DNA of 64,000 nucleotides from Eutreptiella sp. 'Long Island Sound 2002'. Its lineage: Eukaryota > Protista > Euglenida. Numbering within the stretch: position 1 is the first letter of the stretch; every line of letters starts with the position of its first letter. Shown piece after piece: positions 4,791-23,959 of this stretch. A program made the translations under genes and the position numbers. Where the stretch lies: contig OZ038378.1 in assembly GCA_964036045.1 (NCBI GenBank), positions 179,924,001 to 179,988,000 on the forward strand, read 5' to 3'. The notes beneath the pieces are model-generated. The model had not been told where the DNA came from. It was given only the letters and a program-made list of their open reading frames with translations, and did not search any database.

Positions 4791-5985
4791 AGCCAGGGCC
4801 GAGGGTTGGCCGACGCATGTGAAGGGTGGTGTTGTTGCAGGGCCATGCTTGTAGCCTTGTTGGCGTGGGCGTGGGGCGGTGTGTGTGCTGGTCTGGGGAA
4901 GGGCTTGTGTGCATGTGGCGTGTGCTGGGGCGAGGGCAGAATGGAGGTGCGGTGGCAGGGCATTAGGAGGGCACTGGGGACAGCTGTTAGGCGAACGGTG
5001 CTGCAGACAGCTGTGGCACATGGAGGGCACTGGGGACCGGTCGCCAGCGCAACGCGGGCAACTCTTGCTGCTCTCTTGGCGGAGCCCACAGCTGCTTGCC
5101 GCCTTGTTTGCACTATTGGCCATTTGTTTGTCCACCAGCAGGTCCCCCCGCCGCCCCGCTTGTTGCAAGAACAACCTTGTGTTAGAACAACAGTAGTATT
5201 GTTTCGGCGAGATTTTGGAACCGCATGGAATTTGGCGGTTCCAATTTCTCTGTGTCCAAGAAGATCCAGTTTTATTCTGTGGTTTGGGGCTGGGGATGGT
5301 ATTTTGGGGATGCCAGCTTCTGTCCTGCGACTTGTTGATCCTCCCTTGCAAGTATCATGCCTCATTCTGCTTCTTGCTTCACTTTCAGAGAGTGACACAT
5401 GAATGGTACGCTGGTGGTAGTATTATGATCTTGTGTCTTCTCGCCATTTACCCAAACAACGACCATGTCGCGACAGCAGGTGTTGTTTCCGTCCAAGTTT
5501 GGAATTTTACCTTTGTTTTCGCACCGGGAGGGAAGGGGATGTTTTCACATGACCGCACTGCGCTGTCGGCGCTGAGCCGGTATGTTTCCTCTGCGCCCAC
5601 TTTATACCGTAACTCTGTTTAGTGTGTAGGTCTGTATCCAAAAAGGTGATATTCAGGAAAAGTGACCATGACTGAAATGATTGGGAAGGAAATACACAGT
5701 GGCGAACAAGTGACCCTGACAGACCGGCCCTCTGCCATCTGCTGCTGGTCATCTTTAAAGCCCTGCACTCCCCTTACCAGTAAACTGCCTGGTTTGCGCT
5801 GCGAATGGCAAGGCAAAATGCTTTGTAATTGCAGATCATTTGAGCAGCATTGCACTGAGTAAGTCTGGCTTGAGGTGAGGGTCCTGCTGGTGATTTGAAA
5901 ACCTGTGCCCCCCCCAGAATATTTGCCTCGCTGGACGGAATCAGCATATTACGTCAGTACGCACCTGGGGTGCCTCTTGTCCACT

Positions 5986-14410: not shown

Positions 14411-15379
14411 GAGAGTATGTTAGGCCGCAGCCATGCATTGGAACTGGTGCCTCCCGGCGATGCCTATGCATTGATATGTCACGTTGCGTTTATTGTTGAT
14501 GTACCCTAGAGGGTAACACCATACAGTCACAGGGTGGTTGGCATTGGTTAAATCCCGGTCATTCCACGGGCGGGGCGTAGCATCGCGCCATATGCCGACA
14601 CCTTCCCACTCTTGGACCACTTTCAGGGTGGGTGGGGGGGCAACCACGAAGGCGGGGGGGGGGGGGGGGAGCTCCGGACCCTCACATATATGGCATAAAA
14701 TGACTGCCTCATCACGTTAATCACTTCGAGGCATGTGTTTCGGGGAAATTTTTTGAAAGGCAAGGGGCACGTGGTACTTTTATTTGAGGGCATAGCACCC
14801 CCGAGTTGATTCCCAGCCAATATTGCTAGTGGCGCCCCACCCAGGCTGAACCATGCTTGATTTCAAGGCAGAATTGATGTATGTTCCGAAACCCGTTGGA
14901 GGAGCAAGGGGGGGAGGGGCTGTTTGCACCACACGCACTACGCCTTTCCAAAAAAAAAGCGTCTTTTTTTTTTGTATTCCGACACTGGTAAGTTCTGCCG
15001 ACAGGCAACAGTGTGCGTAGGCACCATGGCCTAGGAGTATGTACAGTGAGAAAGGCTTAGCCACTGGACTGGATACGGATGAGGTATTTCCCTGGAACCC
15101 ACGGAGTCCAGCGGGGGCGCCTGCCCGTTTAATACTGCACATTGTATGCGGGAGGTGAGACCTACCACGACCTTGGGGATCCACACCTGAATTGGACAAA
15201 AAAGCGTCTCTCCGTGCACTACATGCCCACAACGAGCGCGCACACACCACTGGCACATTGTGTGCAAGAAACGTGCCGGATGCCCTTCCTGGGGTGCTCC
15301 TCCTCGGGGTCAAACATGGGTGATGGAAGTGGTGGAGATGACAGAGGTGAAGAAAAGAGGCCCTTGAAACGATGAATAT

Positions 15380-15451
15380 TGCCGGCACTAGGGTTTGAGC
15401 CCATGACCTCCCGGTTGCAGAGGCACTAGTTTACCCACTAGGGTATGGGCC
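15380..15451 (-). pseudogene. tRNA-like relic or SINE head
   Basis: The minus strand reads GGCCCATACCCTAGTGGGTAA...CTGCAACCGGGAGGTCATGGGCTCAAACCCTAGTGCCGGCA: 72 nt with decayed A-box and T-arm/B-box-like segments and imperfect stems. Confidence 0.5.
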
Positions 15452-15535
15452 AACTCTGACAAACGCCTGCACACTGGTGCTATTGATATTTGATCAATTA
15501 TGGTTTTCCTCCAATATTGAGTTGCCTTAGAATGA

Positions 15536-16822
15536 GTGCGGGCCTGCGCCAATTGCTCGCAGAGATTCCGGAAAATGGTCCGCCCCGACCGTGGGAGGTA
15601 TAGGGTCACCAGTGACATGTTCACGTCCAGGTGGAAGTGTACGCAGTGCGGAGAAACACGGAGGACATGGAACCCTAGCACCACATCGGACCCCACGGAG
15701 GAAAAGCAGCCACCTCTGGAACGGACTGTAACCCCAGGCAAATATGCCATATCTCTACGCACGGAAGGGAAAAACTTACATGTCACATACGTAACAGAGG
15801 CATATACGGTAGCCACAGTACAGGATACGGTGATGGCGGTATGGGGCATTCCCGTGGACATGCAACGCATCGTATACCCGGGCAGTCTACGATCGCTACA
15901 ACCCAAGGACGTGCTGAGCCAGCATGGTATAACAAAGGATGCCACGTTGTACGTGGTACCAAGGGCAAGGGGTGGAATGGACACGGGCAATGAGAGTGTC
16001 ACCATACCAACAAAAAAGGTGCCGGCACCACAGCATACTGTGCCGTCACCGCATAGGCATGGGCCGTATACGGCGACGGAGGAAAAAGGGGTGGAACAGA
16101 CCACACTAGAGAAATTGAGACAGCAAATCATGATGGGGCACACATCGGCACATTGCTGGGAGACATGGCAGCATGACATAGGATTCCAATTCAATGGAGT
16201 GTATTATAGGGACAAGCTGGCCATGCAACCCAGAAAGGCGTTGCTGGATGAGATGTGGCAAGCGCAGCCGTGGAACGTCAGGATGGGAGATGGGGTGACC
16301 ATACCGCACAATGCAGGCAGAATGTTACCGCCTATGGCTGATTCCCTGCGGTGCTTGGCACCAGGGGAAACGGCAATATGGACACTACCAGCATTCACGG
16401 GTGGCAAGGAAGATGCGGTGAATGAAAGTGGGACACAGCTACCATGGACAGGCAACCAAGTGGAGCACATCAAACAAATAGATGCTGTGCTAGAACGCAT
16501 CACCACGTCCCCGTCGGTAAGCATATGGGTGGTGTTCCGCACCAGGCAGGGCCCCACACAATCGCCCATGGTGTGTCTCCAGCTGGATGGTAGGCACCGA
16601 GTCAGAGTTGCACGAAAACGGGCAGCATATGTCATATATGATAAGTCTGGACAATTCTACAGAGCTACGGCCAAGTCCCCCAGGGAATTGTTGCCTATAC
16701 AAGGGAAGGCACCCTACCATTTCGCCATCTTGCTGAAATCCAGCTCTATGTGGACACCACTCCTACGCATTCCGGGTACCTTTGTGAGGAACAAAGCAGC
16801 TATGCATGCTAGGGTCAAATAA
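15536..16822 (+). CDS. LINE N-terminal ORF: C4 zinc finger plus ubiquitin-like domain (15743-15976) ending RARGG
   Basis: CANC-x27-CTQC. GIPVDMQRIVYPG...LSQHGITKDATLYVVPRARGG aligns by eye with ubiquitin GIPPDQQRLIFAG...[21 protein letters not shown]. Confidence 0.8.
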   Translation: MRACANCSQRFRKMVRPDRGRYRVTSDMFTSRWKCTQCGETRRTWNPSTTSDPTEEKQPPLERTVTPGKYAISLRTEGKNLHVTYVTEAYTVATVQDTVMAVWGIPVDMQRIVYPGSLRSLQPKDVLSQHGITKDATLYVVPRARGGMDTGNESVTIPTKKVPAPQHTVPSPHRHGPYTATEEKGVEQTTLEKLRQQIMMGHTSAHCWETWQHDIGFQFNGVYYRDKLAMQPRKALLDEMWQAQPWNVRMGDGVTIPHNAGRMLPPMADSLRCLAPGETAIWTLPAFTGGKEDAVNESGTQLPWTGNQVEHIKQIDAVLERITTSPSVSIWVVFRTRQGPTQSPMVCLQLDGRHRVRVARKRAAYVIYDKSGQFYRATAKSPRELLPIQGKAPYHFAILLKSSSMWTPLLRIPGTFVRNKAAMHARVK

Positions 16823-18023
16823 GAACCCACCATGATGTGGAGGATATTGCTGCCGGCACAATATCGCACCGAAAACAGTTTCTATAGGTATATGAATGAC
16901 ATGGGTGATGTGGGAACCAGCACGGCAGTGCGACAATCAAAACTCCCGTGGTCAGGGGTGAGGCGGGTGGCCTCGCCAGACAAGGAATCTTTTTAGTGGG
17001 AATGGACTCTCCCAGAGTCGTTTAGGTGCACCCTCCAAGAAGCATTGTACCGCACTAGGGAAGAACCCAATGAAGAGGATGGCACCGAACTGACCATGGA
17101 AACAGTGCCATACCAACACATAGAACTCACCCACCATCAAGAGATCTATGTGGTCTTGCAAGCAAAAGCCAAGCAAGGCGAAACACTATCTCTTATAGAA
17201 GCACCCGATGATCTGGAAACGGAGCTGGGGGTGTTATGGTAGATGAATACGAAATACCAACAAATAGGCTGCTGATGCATATACCGGACATATTCCTCCA
17301 AGGAGTACCACACGTCAGGTACCAACGACTCGTGACCATTCACCCGGGATGTAATAAGGCAGAGTTGGCACAAACTCTATGGGAGGCAGGGAAGTTGGTG
17401 CTGAAACACCTGCATAGTGACCAACGGGTGCACTTTGGTACATGGTCACAGGACACGGATAGGGGTGTCAATGAGGCAAGCATACCATGTTTTGGGCGAC
17501 AATGAGATATGGATGGACGCACCAATTGGAACACCGGAGAGCTCCATCCGACGATATGCAGCGCTATTTGGGTCATTCACCACAGTGGATCATCTACCAA
17601 TGCTAGGTGGCAAGGAGAGAACAGGTTACAAGATTCAATACGGAAACAAAGATAGTGCGGTAGTAGCACATGGGCTCACACTGGAGTCGGGACTAGGTGA
17701 AATACATTTCACGGGGAGAAAACAACCCACAGAGCTCGCACACATGAAGCAGTCAATAAGGCTCCCCGAAGGCATGGAAGATGAACACGACGAAGATTGG
17801 TGGAGATTTGAGATTGGCCGCCTGATGGGTGCCGAAAAGGCAACAGAACAGGAAGATAACAGGCTGTCGGCGGCCAACCTGTCCAGGTTGATGGATGAAC
17901 AGGCAGACATGCTGCAATGACAGAGGATAGAAGCGCCCGGCACGCCGTACCACACAACAGGTACATGTGACGGGGCAGTAGGCATCACCCTGTTAGTGGG
18001 GATGATGTTGGTGGGCATATGGT
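16823..18023 (+). pseudogene. Disrupted continuation of the LINE ORF1 region with an RRM-like segment
   Basis: The 15536 frame continues past TAA/TAG into ORF 17045-17242, then frameshifts. SSIRRYAALFGSFTTVDHLPMLGGKERTGYKIQYGNKDSAVVAHG is RRM-like. Confidence 0.5.
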
Positions 18024-19703
18024 GTGCTACACGCCTCTGCCAACACCGACGACAGTGCACTAGGCGCACAACGCCCAGCACACCGCGAATCTATAGATAC
18101 GTCTCCACCCATGTGGATGTATCTTATAACTGTCCTCCTTGTGGTCGCAGTGAAGGAACCCATTCCAACTACACCACAAGGAATGCAAGGATGTACAGTA
18201 AATAGCAAACAAGTACGAAATAGAACGATAGTGAAAACAACCAAGGTTCACCCGTGGAATATAAAGCGAATGCCTTGGTGGTACCATATGATGAGAATCG
18301 TGTGCATTGTGTGGTTGACTGCAGGTGACTACGATGTGACACACCACACGGGGGTGGCTAGGCAACACATATGGTCCAGGGGTGCAGAACCCAAAGGTGA
18401 CTTACTAATGCGGTGGAACATACAACGGCGCCTCATTACGTTGAGCAACGACATGGCATATGGTCAGCAAACATGGAACGATAGTCAATGGAAAATAACG
18501 ATGGCCCATGATGTCCACCCCAACATAGGGCCACCACCGCCCCCACCGGATGAATTAACATACATGACGCTGAATGTAGGAGGGCCCCACATATCCAAAA
18601 AGAGATGGGCAGGATTGCCGACTGAAATAGAACAACAAGAGCCGGTGTGTGTGGGATTGCAAGAGGTGCGGTTTAGGAGTGGTAGTAACCACATGGCACT
18701 AACGTCGCAACTACTGCACACATATGTGCCCATGTACCACAAAACACAGACGGCGGACGTAATGATGCTCATACACAACCGTATATCCCCGTATGTTACA
18801 ATGCTGCCATCCCGTACCCCACATGCCATGGCCGTGAGGGTGGAGTTACCGGGTAGACTACCATTTACTGTCATCAACCATCACGGCAGATTCACCAAAC
18901 AGGATAGGGTAATCATGGATGAGTGGTTTAAGACAATCCCAGAAGTCGGTGTGTTCATGGGGGACTTGAATGACACAGTGTGGCCATCAACGCGAGGAAT
19001 GAAGAGGTGGTGGCATCGTGCACTCCAAGATGGGGATCTCATCGACCCTGTATATGCACTGCACCCGCAATCACATGTGCCCAATGTTGCCACGAGAAAA
19101 GGCAAGCGGTTGGATGCTATCTTGTGTTCCCCACTGTTCTGCGGTGTATGCCAGCCCACAGGGTACCAGGTGCGGACTATGGCCTCGGGAGGGGATCATG
19201 ATGCAGTGATCATGCACACCACAAACCCGTTATACACATCAACTGCAACAGCGCCTGTCCAAGGGTCCGTGCGCATGTGGTCACGAGGAAAGTTTCAGGC
19301 ATTTCACAGGCACATGTCCAGGTGGGCAGAGCAGGCAGAAGCGCAAGAAGGAACAGTGAAAAGACAAGAACAAATATTCGCAGAAATGAGCCGGTTTGTG
19401 GAGCGGCAGGCATCGCCACCGAAAGTAATGGATCCTAATGAACAAAGACTCAAAGAGGCCTGGGAAAGCTCACCCCAATCCCATAGGGTAGCCAAGGACT
19501 GGTGTGAATATCAAGCACTAAAGCGGCTCAGGATGGCAAACAAAGGACTACGACAATTCCGGAAAGCAGCAATACATACGGGATCCAAGTTCTTTAGCGA
19601 ATCAAAACTGTGGTTACTTACGCCGTTTCGCATGGCACAACGGCAGCCAGAGGAGCAGTCTGCACGGAAACTTCTGTCCAAATTTGCCGGAAACCCGCCA
19701 TGA
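18024..19703 (+). CDS. LINE apurinic endonuclease (APE/EEP) region, preceded by a 2A-like DVHPNIGP motif
   Basis: TLNVGG, GLQEVR, FMGDLND, KRLDAIL, GGDHDAV. The TGA at 19701-03 is internal because the frame continues to KAAGPDQV and into RT. Confidence 0.9.
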   Translation: MLHASANTDDSALGAQRPAHRESIDTSPPMWMYLITVLLVVAVKEPIPTTPQGMQGCTVNSKQVRNRTIVKTTKVHPWNIKRMPWWYHMMRIVCIVWLTAGDYDVTHHTGVARQHIWSRGAEPKGDLLMRWNIQRRLITLSNDMAYGQQTWNDSQWKITMAHDVHPNIGPPPPPPDELTYMTLNVGGPHISKKRWAGLPTEIEQQEPVCVGLQEVRFRSGSNHMALTSQLLHTYVPMYHKTQTADVMMLIHNRISPYVTMLPSRTPHAMAVRVELPGRLPFTVINHHGRFTKQDRVIMDEWFKTIPEVGVFMGDLNDTVWPSTRGMKRWWHRALQDGDLIDPVYALHPQSHVPNVATRKGKRLDAILCSPLFCGVCQPTGYQVRTMASGGDHDAVIMHTTNPLYTSTATAPVQGSVRMWSRGKFQAFHRHMSRWAEQAEAQEGTVKRQEQIFAEMSRFVERQASPPKVMDPNEQRLKEAWESSPQSHRVAKDWCEYQALKRLRMANKGLRQFRKAAIHTGSKFFSESKLWLLTPFRMAQRQPEEQSARKLLSKFAGNPP

Positions 19704-22109
19704 GACCCCGAACAATGTAAGGAGATACTACACAAGGTACCGACCCAAAAAACGGGCTTCCAAACAGCTCCACCATCATGGGAAACCTTCCATAAGGTAG
19801 TCAAGCAGCCCCAGAAAAAAGCAGCAGGACCAGATCAAGTGGCGCCACACCTTGTGTCATGGCTTCCCCTGGACCTGCAGTGGGAAGTGTACCAGGCAGT
19901 GCTAGAGGTATTGGTCACAGGAGAAATACCGCAACATTGGTTGGAGGGAAGGATAACACTATTGTATAAAAAAGGGGACCCTTCCCAGGCAGCAAACTAC
20001 AGACCCATGGCGGTGTCGGGGGCCATGTATTTGATACTGGCACGATTGCTGCTGGGTGCTCTGAAGGACCCAATAGAACAATCACTATCGGCACGCCAAG
20101 CGGGCGGAAAAAAGGGGGAAACGCCGGCACAACATGCATTGGCAATGTTGACCAGGCTGCATGCGAAGGACAATGAGGAGGCTTATGTTTGCCTAATTGA
20201 TATAGCCAAAGCCTACCCGAGCATGCCGCACCCCGCCATAACGTACGCCTTGCAGGCAATTGGGACACCACAACACCTCATAGAAATGATAAGGGACATC
20301 TACCACAAAAGCACGTTGCAGTATGGGTCATTTGTGTACTCATTAGAGCGAGGAGTGAAAGAAGGCTGCCCACTCTCGCCGTCACTGTTTGTGCTAGTGT
20401 ACGAGGCCTTTCATCACACGTTGGCGGCAAAATTTCCAGGATTGGAAGTATACGTGTATATGGATGATATTGCCATTGTGGCGCGCAATCTCACCCAGTT
20501 GAAGGCGGCCATGAATAGGATCTCAGAACTGTCGCAAATCCTGGGGTTCCAAGTTAACCCAGGGAAGACAGAACTGTACCACTGGGCGAGAAAACCACAC
20601 AATGCAAGAGTGATATGGAATGGACAACACATACAGGCAAGATCGCCCGTGTTCAGCTATCTAGGTCATATGGTTGCACATCCTGCGCATGTGTCGCTAG
20701 CGCGCTCCCAGATACTGGCGGAAGTAAAGAGTGATCTGAACAGGTATAAGCAGCTGCCGTTGAACGCCTTTGAAAGGGTACAACTGGTGAACTCCGTCCT
20801 CATTCCCAGGTGGCTGTACCATGCCATGTTTGTACCCCATGATCGCATGTTCCACAAGATAGATCAAAGGGTACGTGATTTTGTGACGGCGGCAAAAGGC
20901 GTGGAACCCAAGTACAACGCAAGCCATGTCGCCGCATCCCAAAAGAATGGAGGGCTAGGGCTGCACCAAATCTACTGGGCCTACATAGCACGGTATATCA
21001 CCATCATGCAACGCACTCTGCAAGACGGAGACCATCCCATTACCAAAGCAGCCAGCCGACCTGTGCACCACACCATGGCACCACTCACAGACTATGTCCA
21101 CATGGTGGAGCAAATGGGAGGAACAGTACCAATTCAAATGGATGATAGGCAACGCCCGCAAGGGGGACCGGATCTGTTCGATGAAGAGGATTCAGAGGAT
21201 GGCGATATGCTCAGGGCCCAAGAGAGGGTGGTAGGCCTCATGGAATATAGGGCGCAGTACCACGGCACTGCACACCCGCCGGACGTGGATGACACGGGCA
21301 CACTCCCAGCAGGTTTTAGACAAGTCATGATAGGCGGCATGGTGTGTTACACCAATGGAAAGGACAAAACCGATACCACATGGTACAGTGATGGCAGTAA
21401 GCAGAACAATAGGGCGGGAGTAGGAATCAAATGTGGCCCATTGGAGATAATTGCCAGAGTGACGGGTCCGCAGACATCATATCGGGCCGAACTGCAAGGG
21501 GCGGCTAATGTGAGTTGTTTGGCAGACCAGGAAGATGAGTTGGTCATAGACAACAAAGCAGTAGTGGATTATGGGGCAGTAACACCACATAGGGAATGCT
21601 CGGATGTAGACCTGCGGCAAATAATACAAACACACCAAGGGGCCAAGCAGCTGCAATGGAGATGGATCCCAAGCCACGGGGTGATCAAACGATACCACAC
21701 AGACCAGGAAAAGAAAGACATCAAGCACCATGATGTCGTGGACAGACTGGCAAAGTCGGCGGCAAAACTTCCCTTGCCGGAAGCGCCACTGGGGACAGTG
21801 GATAGCATCACCATATGTAATGGAGTCACACCTACACCGGCCAAGAAGTGGATCATCGAATACCGGAACGCGGTGAAATGGGGAGGGACCCATTGGATGA
21901 GCTGGCTTCCGCTACGAGGATCACGAAGAATGACATGGCTCACATGGCTGTGGGGCAACGTCCGCTCGCAAGGGACACGGGCACCATGGGAGCGGGGCAA
22001 GGAAAAATGCCCCTTGTGCGGGTGCATCCATGGAACCACAGTGCATAATCGACTCATCCAGTGCCCAGTATGGGAACCAGAGTTCAAAAGGATGTGGACG
22101 ACTAGCTAG
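19704..22109 (+). CDS. LINE reverse transcriptase, RNase H and CCHC
   Basis: LLYKKGDP..ANYRPM, IDIAKAYPSM, GVKEGCPLSP, YMDD, VNPGKT, YLG. RNase H WYSDGS, YRAELQG, IDN, WIPSH, VDRLAK. CPLCGCIHGTTVHNRLIQC. Confidence 0.95.
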   Translation, partial: DPEQCKEILHKVPTQKTGFQTAPPSWETFHKVVKQPQKKAAGPDQVAPHLVSWLPLDLQWEVYQAVLEVLVTGEIPQHWLEGRITLLYKKGDPSQAANYRPMAVSGAMYLILARLLLGALKDPIEQSLSARQAGGKKGETPAQHALAMLTRLHAKDNEEAYVCLIDIAKAYPSMPHPAITYALQAIGTPQHLIEMIRDIYHKSTLQYGSFVYSLERGVKEGCPLSPSLFVLVYEAFHHTLAAKFPGLEVYVYMDDIAIVARNLTQLKAAMNRISELSQILGFQVNPGKTELYHWARKPHNARVIWNGQHIQARSPVFSYLGHMVAHPAHVSLARSQILAEVKSDLNRYKQLPLNAFERVQLVNSVLIPRWLYHAMFVPHDRMFHKIDQRVRDFVTAAKGVEPKYNASHVAASQKNGGLGLHQIYWAYIARYITIMQRTLQDGDHPITKAASRPVHHTMAPLTDYVHMVEQMGGTVPIQMDDRQRPQGGPDLFDEEDSEDGDMLRAQERVVGLMEYRAQYHGTAHPPDVDDTGTLPAGFRQVMIGGMVCYTNGKDKTDTTWYSDGSKQNNRAGVGIKCGPLEIIARVTGPQTSYRAELQGAANVSCLADQEDELVIDNKAVVDYGAVTPHRECSDVDLRQIIQTHQGAKQLQWRWIPSHGVIKRYHTDQEKKDIKHHDVVDRLAKSAAKLPLPEAPLGTVDSITICNGVTPTPAKKWIIEYRNAVKWGGTHWMSWLPLRGSRRMTWLTWLWGNVRSQGTRAPWERGKEKCPLCGCIHGTTVHNRLIQCPVWEPEFKRMWTTS

Positions 22110-23219
22110 GGAGATTGGGCCGCCCAAATGGAGGATTGGTACAATGACGCGACTCCAGAGGACAAGCACCGCATCAGTAAATTGCAGATCCCGGAAAGCC
22201 TGATTGAGGCACTGCAGCCTGGTCAGAAGCGTGAACTCCGGCGCAAAGTGGCGGAGCACCAATACCTGGCAATGATAGGAATGACACAACTCAGGGGCAC
22301 ACTTCCCATGATGCCAAAGGACCCGGCGTGGGTGGAAGGAAATGCAGGACCGGCATGGTATGGGGCGCTTCGGGCACGAAAGGTGAGCCCAAATGTCACA
22401 GAAAAGAACCTTAGAGAACAAGTGCACTATCAACCGAAAAAGCGCACAACCTGGGTAGTAAAAGCAGACCAACATTGTAAGGACGCCACAGCCCCATTGC
22501 GTCAAGTGTACAACAAAGTAAAGGTGTATGCGGTAGGAGACGTAGCAAGAAAAAGGAAAAGACAGCTGTTGGACATACTGGGGTCCTCCATAATGCAGAC
22601 CACAGGAGCAGACGATCTGCGCGAACAGATATGTCAAATACTACAGCCGCGGTGGTCCATACTGTATGGTCCAGGAAACCACATGCCAATAGGAGGATAT
22701 AAGATCACCAAGTCCACCATAGAAGGGGTAGAGGCGGATGCCAAAACAGCCTTAGCTATGCGTTACAAGGTAGGGGTCGCCATGCACAACATGGCCAGGT
22801 GGTTGCAGTACACCCTGAAGTGGAGAGATTACTACCAGCAGCAGAAAAAGAAAATGTACCATCAAGATTCCAAAGGGATAGTGCAACAAGTGTTTCGCAA
22901 ATGGTATAGACAAGGGCAGGTGCACATGCGTCACTACAATACCCAAAACGTGATGTCACCGCAACCGGCATGGGATGCATGGGAGGAGCAGGCAAGGCAA
23001 CTCTGGAGTCAGTCTACCAAAAAGAAAATGGAATGCACTTACCGGAGGGTGAAGGACGAGATCCGACAGTACATTCGAAAGCTGTTAGCCCGACACGAGT
23101 GGGCTGTAGCCATACTGCATGGCGAGGCGATCAACGCCAGCCGCAAAGGACGCCCTAGGGATGGCAATGAATGTGGTATTGACGGCAGCAGCATACACAA
23201 ACGGCGTAGGACAAAGTAG
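22110..23219 (+). CDS. LINE C-terminal region, in frame with RT after one TAG
   Basis: Same frame as 19839. A paralogous relic at about 28450 has W at the TAG position (MWLDTWGPW vs MWTTS*GDW). Confidence 0.75.
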   Translation, partial: GDWAAQMEDWYNDATPEDKHRISKLQIPESLIEALQPGQKRELRRKVAEHQYLAMIGMTQLRGTLPMMPKDPAWVEGNAGPAWYGALRARKVSPNVTEKNLREQVHYQPKKRTTWVVKADQHCKDATAPLRQVYNKVKVYAVGDVARKRKRQLLDILGSSIMQTTGADDLREQICQILQPRWSILYGPGNHMPIGGYKITKSTIEGVEADAKTALAMRYKVGVAMHNMARWLQYTLKWRDYYQQQKKKMYHQDSKGIVQQVFRKWYRQGQVHMRHYNTQNVMSPQPAWDAWEEQARQLWSQSTKKKMECTYRRVKDEIRQYIRKLLARHEWAVAILHGEAINASRKGRPRDGNECGIDGSSIHKRRRTK

Positions 23220-23959
23220 GACAGTATGTCGCAAGAGAGAGGAGGAAAAAAACACACAGTGAACGAGAATAAGAGTTTGCAGGGAGGAAGCACCTTGGAA
23301 GGAAAGATGCATCTATGGGTCTCAACAATACAGGGGACTACGTGAGCTTCACCATCAACATAAGGCCGTTAGGCGTGACACTGCGTAGTGCATATGCAAG
23401 GGGTAGACCAAGCAGGTAGTGAACAGAGACAGCTCCCCAGGTAAAGCTGGAACACATGCCAAATGTGGAGCACTCGTTTGTACTATATGCCCTACTTCTT
23501 GAACCAGGCGGTTGCCTGAGAGCTCACATTACACTCTTTGAACTTGTTGAGCCTGAGAAAAAAAAAGATTATGATTCAATGCTTGAGAGTGCGGATGCAT
23601 GCGGGGTGGGATTGGCTGCCGTGTCGGGGGATGTTGTGGAGAGCACCAATTACGTTTTGAAGAAGGGGTGCAACGGGTATAGTTACAGGGGTCGGGGTGC
23701 GGGTAAGAGTGCAATGGAACGGGAAGCAATGGTCGTCCAGCAGGTTTGCGAATGGTGGTTTCTAACCTTTGACTTGCCGTTGTTGCACTATATAACACCG
23801 CGGCGTGCACCGCCGCTTCACTTCTAAGCACCACCGCCCAAGCACCCTCCACCCAAGCGCCCTGTGCGACCCAGCTATGTTACTCTTCGCCCATCCATGG
23901 ACGCCGCCGATGTGAGGAAGCTGCTAGAGGAGAGTCAGAAGGCGACCCTCGCCCTAGTG

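What the first reader, a model, noticed from the sequence alone, without database searches (positions are those of the whole stretch)
15536..16822. LINE encodes a ubiquitin-like domain with an intact di-glycine, fused inside its polyprotein
Seen: Zn finger, then a 78-aa Ubl ending VVPRARGG, immediately followed by MDTG... and more element protein. Established: host deubiquitinases cleave after LRGG in ubiquitin fusions, and some pestiviruses exploit captured ubiquitin for polyprotein processing. Inference: the retrotransposon uses host DUB cleavage to release its downstream proteins, or makes a conjugatable Ubl or decoy. I do not know of this as a standard LINE ORF1 domain.
Basis: partly seen in the sequence, partly recalled or inferred. 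Interest (0 to 1): 0.8.

Follow-up and report, generated by a model that had tools for sequence, protein, structure and literature searches.

The report
Ubiquitin-like cleavage module in euglenid LINE
A family of jumping genes (LINEs) in a Euglena-type alga carries, inside its first protein, a diverged copy of ubiquitin whose cutting/tagging end (Gly-Gly) has been kept by selection, most likely so that the cell's own ubiquitin-trimming enzymes cut the element's long protein in two.

Summary
Window 15743-15976 encodes a 78-aa ubiquitin homologue ending RARGG, followed by Met. A 12-sequence profile matches ubiquitin end to end (E about 1e-10). AlphaFold gives a beta-grasp (pLDDT 86.7), and the best Foldseek hits are ubiquitin (TM 0.8-0.9).

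It is not chance adjacency. The domain sits at the same place in ORF1 in at least four divergent LINE lineages of this 2.28-Gb euglenid genome. It also occurs in an environmental lineage, represented by two metagenome contigs.

- The two glycines are invariant at 27-56% identity.
- The next residue is Met, Ala or Ile, never Pro.
- dN/dS is 0.15-0.3.

The window copy itself is dead: 5'-truncated, with in-frame stops and a broken 2A. Relatives also carry 2A/StopGo sites. None of the searched parts of these elements holds a protease domain.

Best reading (inferred, about 0.6): host deubiquitinases cut after GG and separate the variable N-terminal part from a conserved ORF1 core of unknown fold. 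Cleavage itself is untested.

I found no paper describing this. The scan had already met it on other DNA of this genome (s1-213082, s1-213168, s1-210240, s1-213067). The new results here are the fold, the homology statistics and the cross-lineage conservation.

The parts
15536..23567 (+). Dead, 5'-truncated copy of a non-LTR retrotransposon. It holds an ORF1 remnant, ORF2 (EN-RT-RNH with a C-terminal extension) and a short 3' tail ending in an A-run.
   Evidence: ORFs and Pfam hits. In-frame stops lie at 16820, 16994, 17240, 17273, 17333 and 17402 in ORF1 and at 19701 and 22107 in ORF2; the A-run is at 23555. Upstream sequence differs from that of longer copies.
15545..15649 (+). Zinc ribbon (CANC-x27-CTQC) just upstream of the Ubl.
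   Evidence: The motif SCANCS...SRW.C..CG..RRTWN is conserved in families A and C. Family B has CPNC-x9-CSTC at the equivalent place. No Pfam family matched.
15743..15976 (+). Ubiquitin-like domain (78 aa, beta-grasp) ending R-A-R-G-G.
   Evidence: Pfam PF00240 E 3.8e-4. Profile against PDB ubiquitin E about 1e-10. AF2 pLDDT 86.7. Foldseek top hits are ubiquitin, TM 0.8-0.9. 35% identity to the host polyubiquitin arrays.
15971..15979 (+). Gly146-Gly147 | Met148, the proposed scissile junction.
   Evidence: G83, G84 and M85 are invariant columns in alignment A1. 17 of 19 distinct tails keep GG. GG aligns with ubiquitin G75-G76, and the Met aligns with Met1 of the next repeat in polyubiquitin.
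15977..17917 (+). ORF1 core downstream of the Ubl: a variable Pro-rich linker, then a conserved domain of unknown fold. In this copy it is interrupted by stops and by a garbled stretch at 17240-17416.
   Evidence: 30-36% identity across families A-E with about 30 invariant columns. No Pfam, PDB or Atlas match. The AF2 model is unusable, pLDDT 35.
18432..18533 (+). Degenerate 2A/StopGo site at the N-terminus of ORF2 (LITLSND...DVHPNIGP). It is broken by an insertion and a Pro-to-Ile change.
   Evidence: Intact counterparts are DVQPNPGP in L034 and DVHPNPGP in L031, L032 and L067.
18564..19139 (+). APE-type endonuclease.
   Evidence: PF03372 E 4.9e-5.
19971..20669 (+). Reverse transcriptase.
   Evidence: PF00078 E 6.7e-28.
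21372..21755 (+). RNase H.
   Evidence: PF00075 E 1.1e-4, below the gathering score in this copy. E 2.6e-7, above the gathering score, in the relative L067.
22110..23216 (+). C-terminal extension of ORF2 in the same frame, beyond a CCHC-like finger. No known domain and no protease.

Best explanation
Window 15536-23567 is a dead, 5'-truncated copy of a euglenid APE-RT-RNase H LINE. Its ORF1 is a polyprotein. Embedded in ORF1 is a true but diverged ubiquitin homologue (about 30% identical to ubiquitin). Its flexible tail R-x-x-G-G is joined directly to the conserved ORF1 core. In live elements the most likely mechanism is that of natural ubiquitin fusions. While or just after ORF1 is translated, host ubiquitin/Ubl C-terminal hydrolases cut the peptide bond after Gly-Gly. 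This releases a lineage-specific N-terminal piece (zinc ribbon with or without a Cys/His cluster, or an Arg/Ser/Pro-rich region) that ends in Ubl-GG. It also releases the ORF1 core with a stabilising N-terminal Met or Ala. The element would thus have a protease-type processing site without encoding a protease, alongside the ribosome-skipping 2A sites that the same elements use elsewhere. Shown here: homology, fold, position, conservation and purifying selection. Inferred: the cleavage itself, the enzyme, and the purpose (separating modules, and possibly a ubiquitin-fusion folding or yield benefit).
For: - Homology: the A1 profile matches ubiquitin at 44 bits, E about 1e-10, full length, with GG on G75-G76. 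Pfam PF00240 is above the gathering score in family B (29.9 bits) and at it in family C (25.4 bits). The Ubl query also finds the host polyubiquitin arrays at 35% identity.
- Fold: AF2 pLDDT 86.7, with the tail after the last strand disordered. The listed top Foldseek PDB hits are almost all ubiquitin or close UBLs, TM 0.8-0.9, rmsd 1.2-2.7 A.
- Conservation: GG and the next Met are invariant in 12 sequences at 27-56% identity. Tails read PRARGG, PRA[QCHG]GG, PRPRGG, MRGRGG, IRGRGG and LRGRGG, and TRLLGG|A in the environmental lineage L066/L067. The +1 residue is never Pro.
- Selection: dN/dS is 0.15-0.29 at dS 0.55-1.0 between subfamilies. Between families A and C the Ubl (52-56% identity) is better conserved than the rest of ORF1 (33-34%).
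- Module boundary: the N-terminal partners differ between lineages, while the Ubl always immediately precedes the same conserved core.
- Processing context: the same elements carry 2A sites. 2A in LINEs is documented (PMC3708506).
- No protease of their own: no protease domain, and no invariant Cys or His in the core.
- No lysine column is conserved in the Ubl, which argues against a chain-forming modifier.
- Precedent: cellular ubiquitin C-terminal hydrolases cut ubiquitin-NS3 junctions in cytopathogenic pestiviruses (PMC8310069).
Against: - Cleavage is not demonstrated.
- The Ubl is only 27-35% identical to ubiquitin.
- The position equivalent to ubiquitin Leu73, which by my own knowledge is important for many DUBs, is Ala, Gly or Pro in most lineages. 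The Ile44 position is Thr in family B.
- The Met after GG is also kept in family D, which has no recognisable Ubl and reads NGNM or NCNM there. That Met may therefore have another role, for example as an internal start.
- The downstream domain could not be folded or named, so the biological sense of separating it is unknown.
- The window copy itself is non-functional.
Confidence: 0.6

Rival explanations
1. Conjugatable modifier or decoy. After the junction is cut, the N-terminal product ends in a free Ubl-GG. The host E1/E2/E3 cascade, or a Cys/His-rich RING-like module of the element, activates it and attaches it to host or element proteins, or it titrates ubiquitin-binding factors. This overlaps with the best explanation, because it also requires cleavage.
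For: The intact GG and the conserved Arg at the ubiquitin R72 position, which by my own knowledge is the E1 specificity residue. A Cys/His cluster lies upstream of the Ubl in family B. Earlier scan notes, not checked here, report RING, Ulp1-like and OTU-like modules in other LINE families of this genome.
Against: No lysine column is conserved. The Ubl would carry a long N-terminal extension of about 140 aa to more than 500 aa, which is unusual for a modifier. Pfam finds no RING in the family B segment even at E<=5. The environmental lineage E has only a low-complexity N-terminus.
Confidence: 0.15
2. Uncleaved integral Ubl domain. The beta-grasp acts inside an undivided ORF1 protein as an interaction, solubility or proteasome/VCP-docking module. 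GG is kept as part of a linker.
For: The tail deviates from LRLRGG at the Leu73 position, and the Ile44 patch is not conserved in family B. By my own knowledge, many proteins carry integral UBLs.
Against: By my own knowledge, integral UBLs typically lose the di-glycine. Here GG is invariant while neighbouring tail positions vary. The domain ends exactly at a boundary followed by a variable, Pro-rich linker.
Confidence: 0.17
3. The conserved Met after GG is an internal translation start. The ORF1 core would be made separately by leaky scanning or reinitiation, and the Ubl-containing part would be a distinct upstream product.
For: The Met is conserved in families A-D, including family D, which lacks GG.
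Against: Lineage E has Ala at this position and L062 has Ile. The frame is continuous. Many upstream AUGs would have to be bypassed. The Met also matches Met1 of the next repeat in polyubiquitin, so it may be a relic of the captured gene.
Confidence: 0.06
4. Chance adjacency, or a one-off capture of a host ubiquitin exon in this copy only.
For: None after testing.
Against: The same architecture occurs in dozens of copies and in at least four divergent lineages plus an environmental one. Purifying selection is seen.
Confidence: 0.01

Closest known systems
Natural ubiquitin fusion genes (polyubiquitin, Ub-eL40/UBA52, Ub-eS31/RPS27A, and the Ubl fusion FUBI-eS30)
   Same: A ubiquitin-fold domain whose C-terminal Gly-Gly is joined by a normal peptide bond to the next polypeptide, and which cellular hydrolases remove. 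The ...RGG-M junction aligns with the repeat junction of polyubiquitin.
   Different: The Ubl is only 27-35% identical to ubiquitin. It is internal, with a long N-terminal extension before it. The tail is R-A/G/P/L-x-G-G rather than R-L-R-G-G. It is carried by a retrotransposon and not by a host gene.
Cytopathogenic pestiviruses (BVDV CP1, Osloss, CP Rit) with captured host ubiquitin upstream of NS3 (PMC8310069, PMC13517609)
   Same: A selfish replicator's polyprotein uses a ubiquitin moiety as a processing signal that cellular ubiquitin C-terminal hydrolases cut.
   Different: The pestivirus inserts are recent, sporadic, near-identical copies of host ubiquitin that arise by RNA recombination in single strains. 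Here the module is old, strongly diverged, under purifying selection and fixed across several LINE lineages.
2A/StopGo-bearing APE-type LINEs (Ingi/L1Tc of trypanosomes; Rex1, CR1 and L2 elements of animals; PMC3708506, PMC3894237)
   Same: The APE-RT(-RNase H) layout, a euglenozoan host, and 2A at the N-terminus of ORF2 (DVHPNPGP in relatives, degenerate in the window). All split one translation product without an element-encoded protease.
   Different: According to PMC3708506, Ingi and L1Tc lack an ORF1. These elements have a very large ORF1 polyprotein with a Ubl-GG site. The 2A papers I searched do not mention ubiquitin. An RT phylogeny was not done, so clade membership is open.
Known LINE ORF1p types (coiled-coil/RRM/CTD, CCHC knuckles, PHD, esterase)
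   Same: The position upstream of ORF2. The role is presumed to be that of the element's non-enzymatic protein.
   Different: No RRM, CCHC, PHD or esterase domain was detected. The core is an orphan domain, preceded by a Ubl, which I could not find listed as an ORF1 module.

Membership tests
Ubiquitin family / type-I (processed, GG-terminated) ubiquitin-like proteins | Significant sequence homology to ubiquitin | tested here: met
   Profile A1 against PDB ubiquitin: E about 1e-10, 44 bits, full length. PF00240 scores 29.9 bits in family B, 25.4 in family C, and 20.6 (below the gathering score) in the window copy. 35% identity to host polyubiquitin.
Ubiquitin family / type-I (processed, GG-terminated) ubiquitin-like proteins | Beta-grasp fold | tested here: met
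   AF2 pLDDT 86.7, pTM 0.75, with a beta-beta-alpha-beta-(short helix)-beta element order. Foldseek top hits are ubiquitin, TM 0.8-0.9.
Ubiquitin family / type-I (processed, GG-terminated) ubiquitin-like proteins | Flexible C-terminal tail ending in Gly-Gly | tested here: met
   GG is invariant in A1. 17 of 19 distinct tails keep GG. Lineage E reads RLLGG. The tail has low pLDDT after the last strand.
Ubiquitin family / type-I (processed, GG-terminated) ubiquitin-like proteins | Precursor is cut after GG by a DUB or ULP | not testable with these tools
   This needs an expression or cleavage assay, or N-terminomics.
Ubiquitin family / type-I (processed, GG-terminated) ubiquitin-like proteins | Conjugation to targets through E1, E2 and E3 | not testable with these tools
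   Only indirect evidence: Arg is kept at the R72 position and no lysine is conserved.
APE-type non-LTR retrotransposon (LINE) | APE endonuclease followed by reverse transcriptase in one ORF, with 5'-truncated dispersed copies | tested here: met
   PF03372 and PF00078. At least 98 scored matches and 567 candidates in the genome. The window copy is 5'-truncated.
Ingi/L1Tc clade | RT phylogeny places the element in the clade | not tested
   No reference LINE library was available. Only the layout (APE-RT-RNase H, 2A before EN, euglenozoan host) resembles this clade.
Ingi/L1Tc clade | Single ORF with no ORF1 (as described in PMC3708506) | tested here: not met
   A large ORF1 is present: up to 1705 aa open in L031, and the frame continues further in L030.
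2A/StopGo recoding site | D(V/I)ExNPGP-type motif in frame | tested here: met
   DVEANPGP in ORF1 and DVHPNPGP in ORF2 of family B, DVHPNPGP in lineage E, and DVQPNPGP in a family A copy. The window copy has the broken form DVHPNIGP. Activity was not tested.

The most novel reading that the evidence does not exclude
These euglenid LINEs do more than borrow a cleavage signal. The released N-terminal fragment ending in Ubl-GG would be a transposon-encoded ubiquitin-like modifier or decoy. It would act together with the RING-like fingers and the Ulp1-/OTU-like protease cargo that earlier scan notes report in sister LINE families of this genome. Retrotransposons would then carry a private ubiquitin-like writing and erasing toolkit, used to process their own polyproteins in trans and to manipulate host factors.
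Probability: 0.12. Interest if true: 0.88.

Novelty: new variant of a known kind. Interest (0 to 1): 0.66.

Why it matters
LINE proteins are generally described as unprocessed ORF1p and ORF2p. [quoted passage not shown] The only known way LINEs split a translation product is 2A ribosome skipping.

A conserved ubiquitin-GG junction inside ORF1 would be a second, proteolytic route that hijacks host deubiquitinases. Among selfish replicators it has so far been documented, to my knowledge, mainly as sporadic ubiquitin captures in cytopathogenic pestiviruses.

It adds a new module to the catalogue of LINE ORF1 domains. It shows that an old ubiquitin capture can be domesticated by a retrotransposon and kept for a long time. 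It also gives a simple, directly testable prediction: GG-dependent cleavage. If the fragment proved to be conjugatable, it would be a transposon-encoded Ubl.

Tried and rejected
- Downstream ORF1 core: no Pfam hit, no PDB sequence hit at E<=1, no ESM Atlas lead above noise, and an unusable AF2 model at pLDDT 35. Its fold and function stay unknown.
- Word-based protein searches with the window ORF1, the core alignment A3 and P0006 found only same-species fragments or the query itself.
- The exhaustive profile search was flooded by polyubiquitins, because the profile included the Ubl. Only about 30 single-stretch ORF1 hits could be read from the top 150. Weaker relatives in other taxa may be hidden.
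- Two metagenome scans found nothing. Alignment A4 was too divergent to derive search patterns.
I therefore could not get the full 5' ends of families A and C, the L059 and L062 lineages, or the host polyubiquitin loci.
- Family D: hhalign found no Ubl (probability 0.2%). I could not tell whether it has a decayed remnant or never had one.
- Pfam found no RING in family B and no protease anywhere in these elements.
- A tRNA-like-looking stretch at 15376-15455 was not confirmed by ARAGORN or Rfam.
- Seven literature searches and term look-ups in five papers found no report of a Ubl in a LINE.

Full report
**What is at the coordinates**

The frame-2 ORF 15536-16822 is real. Its translation reads as follows:
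- a CxxC-x27-CxxC zinc ribbon (15545-15649);
- a short acidic/Pro linker;
- a 78-residue segment (15743-15976) ending VVPRARGG;
- Met148 (15977), after which the protein continues.

Downstream in another frame lie an APE endonuclease (PF03372, E 4.9e-5), a reverse transcriptase (PF00078, E 6.7e-28) and an RNase H (PF00075, E 1.1e-4).

**The host**

The window is part of contig C1 of a 2.28-Gb genome in 2317 contigs. A 21-nt string that I recalled as the 3' part of the Euglena spliced leader occurs 3600 times exactly, against 0 for the reversed control. Earlier agents of the scan also took the genome for a Euglena-type protist. I therefore call it a euglenid. The species is not established. The published E. 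gracilis assembly has 46 chromosomes of at most 121 Mb (PMC11252322), whereas contig C3 here is 190 Mb.

**State of this copy**

The window copy is dead.
- Other copies of the same family (L003, L004) and of a sister family (L019, L021) stay open far upstream of the zinc ribbon, with conserved sequence. The window diverges from them just upstream of 15536 and has stops there. This is the usual 5' truncation of LINEs.
- The stop at 16820 is a mutation. L003 and L006 read through it (...ARVKEEPTMMWRILL...).
- Read in frame, ORF1 continued to about 17917, with six in-frame stops and a garbled stretch.
- ORF2 (18024-23216) has two in-frame stops.
- Its 2A site is broken (DVHPNIGP, with an insertion inside the motif).

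Nothing is expressed in a useful form from this locus. The finding concerns the family.

**Is it a ubiquitin-like domain?**

Yes.
- Pfam ubiquitin matches the window copy only weakly: 20.6 bits against a gathering score of 25.4. It passes in family B (29.9 bits) and reaches the threshold in family C (25.4 bits).
- An alignment of 12 copies from divergent lineages (A1), used as a profile against all PDB sequences, hits ubiquitin over its whole length. A single 76-aa ubiquitin scores about 44 bits, E about 1e-10.
- In that match the two glycines fall on G75-G76. The following Met falls on Met1 of the next repeat in polyubiquitin chains.
- AlphaFold2 on A1 gives a confident beta-grasp (mean pLDDT 86.7, pTM 0.75). 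The last five residues (RARGG) form a low-confidence tail after the final strand.
- The listed top Foldseek hits in the PDB are almost all ubiquitin, ubiquitin variants or close UBLs, with TM 0.8-0.9, rmsd 1.2-2.7 A and about 30% identity.
- The 87-aa query also finds the host's own polyubiquitin arrays (228-bp periodicity on C14 and C15) at 35% identity.

**Is it more than chance adjacency?**

Yes. The whole ORF1 query finds at least 98 scored matches among 567 candidates in the genome. The Ubl-bearing copies fall into clearly separate lineages.

| Lineage | Members | Tail | Identity to the window Ubl |
|---|---|---|---|
| A | window, L002-L008 | PRARGG\|M | 78-90% |
| C | L011/L033, L019, L021, L041-L054 | PRA[RQCHG]GG\|M, PRPRGG\|M, PKARGG\|M | 45-56% |
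| B | L020-L032, L064 | IRGRGG\|M | 27-28% |
| singleton | L059 | MRGRGG\|M | 34% |
| singleton | L062 | LRGRGG\|I | about 31-33% over the aligned part |

- In A1 only seven columns are invariant, and three of them are G83, G84 and M85.
- Of 19 distinct tail variants, 17 keep GG. The two exceptions (GS, GK) are single decayed copies.
- The exhaustive protein search brought in P0006, which lies on metagenome contigs L066 and L067 (ENA and JGI). It is only 36% identical to the best copy in this genome. I call this lineage E.
- Lineage E has a spliced-leader-like 5' end directly before the ATG, an Arg/Ser/Pro-rich N-terminus, and a Ubl ending TRLLGG|A. hhalign against A1 gives E 8e-5 over 76 columns with GG on GG, and PF00240 gives E 5e-4. 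After the Ubl come the same conserved core and an ORF2 with DVHPNPGP-EN-RT-RNase H.
- Nei-Gojobori dN/dS for the Ubl between subfamilies is 0.15-0.29 at dS 0.55-1.0 (window-L038, L043-L049, L043-L048, L042-L043). These values are inflated by neutral decay after insertion, so purifying selection in the active lineages is clear.
- Between families A and C the Ubl (52-56% identity) is better conserved than the rest of ORF1 (33-34%).

**Architecture**

The Ubl always sits immediately before the same conserved core. The core is about 30 invariant columns in A3 and extends for several hundred residues. What precedes the Ubl varies:
- families A and C: a zinc ribbon and more Cys-rich sequence;
- family B: a 2A site (DVEANPGP), a zinc ribbon and a Cys/His cluster. 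Pfam does not call this cluster a RING, even at E<=5;
- lineage E: only low-complexity sequence.

The stretch right after GG is variable and Pro-rich. The Ubl-GG therefore marks a module boundary.

Family D (L017, L018, L024) has the core but no recognisable Ubl (hhalign probability 0.2%). At the junction position it reads NGNM or NCNM. I cannot say whether this is loss or primary absence.

No protease domain was found anywhere in the searched parts of these elements. The core has no invariant Cys or His.

**Mechanism**

By established knowledge, linear ubiquitin-X fusions are cut after Gly76 by cellular hydrolases unless X is Pro, and the new N-terminal residue sets stability. [quoted passage not shown]

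The LINE module shows the following features:
- a complete tail with Arg at the R72 position and an invariant GG;
- Met, Ala or Ile at +1, never Pro. Met and Ala are stabilising N-terminal residues;
- a position at a module boundary;
- elements that already rely on protease-free splitting through 2A (PMC3708506);
- no conserved lysine.

The best-supported reading is that host hydrolases cut here and separate the N-terminal accessory part from the ORF1 core. I put this at about 0.6.

Several points count against it.
- The Ubl is only about 30% identical to ubiquitin.
- The Leu73-equivalent position is Ala, Gly or Pro in most lineages.
- The Ile44-equivalent position is Thr in family B.
- The Met after GG also survives in family D, which lacks GG.

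The rivals are:
- a conjugatable modifier or decoy, which also needs cleavage;
- an uncleaved integral UBL;
- an internal start at the conserved Met;
- chance, which is refuted.

**Comparison with what is known**

The closest mechanistic relatives are the natural ubiquitin fusion genes and the ubiquitin insertions of cytopathogenic pestiviruses. The closest element relatives are the 2A-bearing APE LINEs of Euglenozoa (Ingi/L1Tc), which are described as lacking ORF1 (PMC3708506). I could not place the RT phylogenetically.

Seven full-text searches and term look-ups in five papers found no report of a ubiquitin-like domain in a LINE ORF1. [quoted passage not shown] The library searched is incomplete, so this is absence in what I could search.

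**Earlier notes of this scan**

The scan had already met the same module on other DNA of this genome.
- s1-213082 concluded that a GG-ended Ubl belongs to a gag-like ORF1 and is conserved, 'but its fold is unproven'.
- s1-213168 and s1-210240 are first-reader notes of a Ubl, and of a Ubl with a RING, in LINE ORF1.
- s1-213067 describes a RING module between 2A sites in a related LINE.
- s1-199748, s1-213044 and s1-213176 report Ulp1-like and OTU-like cargo in other LINE families. I did not check these. They motivate the novel case.

**Verdict**

This is a real, selected, previously unreported (as far as I could search) ORF1 module. It is a new variant of known kinds: a LINE, and a ubiquitin-fusion processing signal. 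The mechanism is inferred and not shown.

Noticed in passing
L067:100-150 (JGI metagenome contig 3300045730 Ga0488962_0495611): The LINE copy of lineage E begins with ...CAGTCTATTTTTTTTCG directly before the ORF1 ATG. This resembles the 3' end of the Euglena spliced leader. It suggests that these LINE mRNAs are trans-spliced and that copies are reverse-transcribed from SL-capped RNA.
   Followed up: partly
G000 genome-wide (for example C1:29492-29512): The 21-mer CTGAGTGTCTATTTTTTTTCG (spliced-leader 3' part, recalled from memory) occurs 3600 times, dispersed along contig C1, against 0 for the control. This is far more dispersed than I would expect (own knowledge) for tandem SL-RNA genes. It may mark retroposed SL-bearing transcripts.
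   Followed up: no
G000:C15:29319614-29377405 and C14:38300640-38333792: Very large clusters of polyubiquitin genes, with open frames up to 1701 aa (about 22 repeats) and several genes side by side.
   Followed up: no
L017:859-2805, L018:73-2535 (family D): A LINE ORF1 with the same conserved core but no recognisable Ubl. The junction position reads NGNM or NCNM. A separate short ...LTRN(Q/R)GG|E motif lies about 110 aa upstream. This may be a decayed Ubl.
   Followed up: partly
window 18432-18533: The 2A motif of ORF2 is split by an insertion of about 19 codons (LITLSND / MAYGQQTWNDSQWKITMAH / DVHPNIGP). The NPGP has mutated to NIGP.
   Followed up: partly
window 15376-15455: Just upstream of the truncation point there is a stretch that looks tRNA-derived by eye on the minus strand. 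Neither ARAGORN nor Rfam confirms it.
   Followed up: yes
L031:5841-6455 against L030: In L031, ORF1 appears to end at 5895, with an overlapping ORF in another frame. L030 reads straight through, so the apparent overlap or frameshift in L031 is a mutation and not programmed recoding.
   Followed up: partly
L033:3576-5153 (minus strand): A long ORF of tandem repeats of about 30 aa (...GSPPQPTTGSPSADLQLRRISSGSVAHSAS...) lies next to a truncated family C copy.
   Followed up: no
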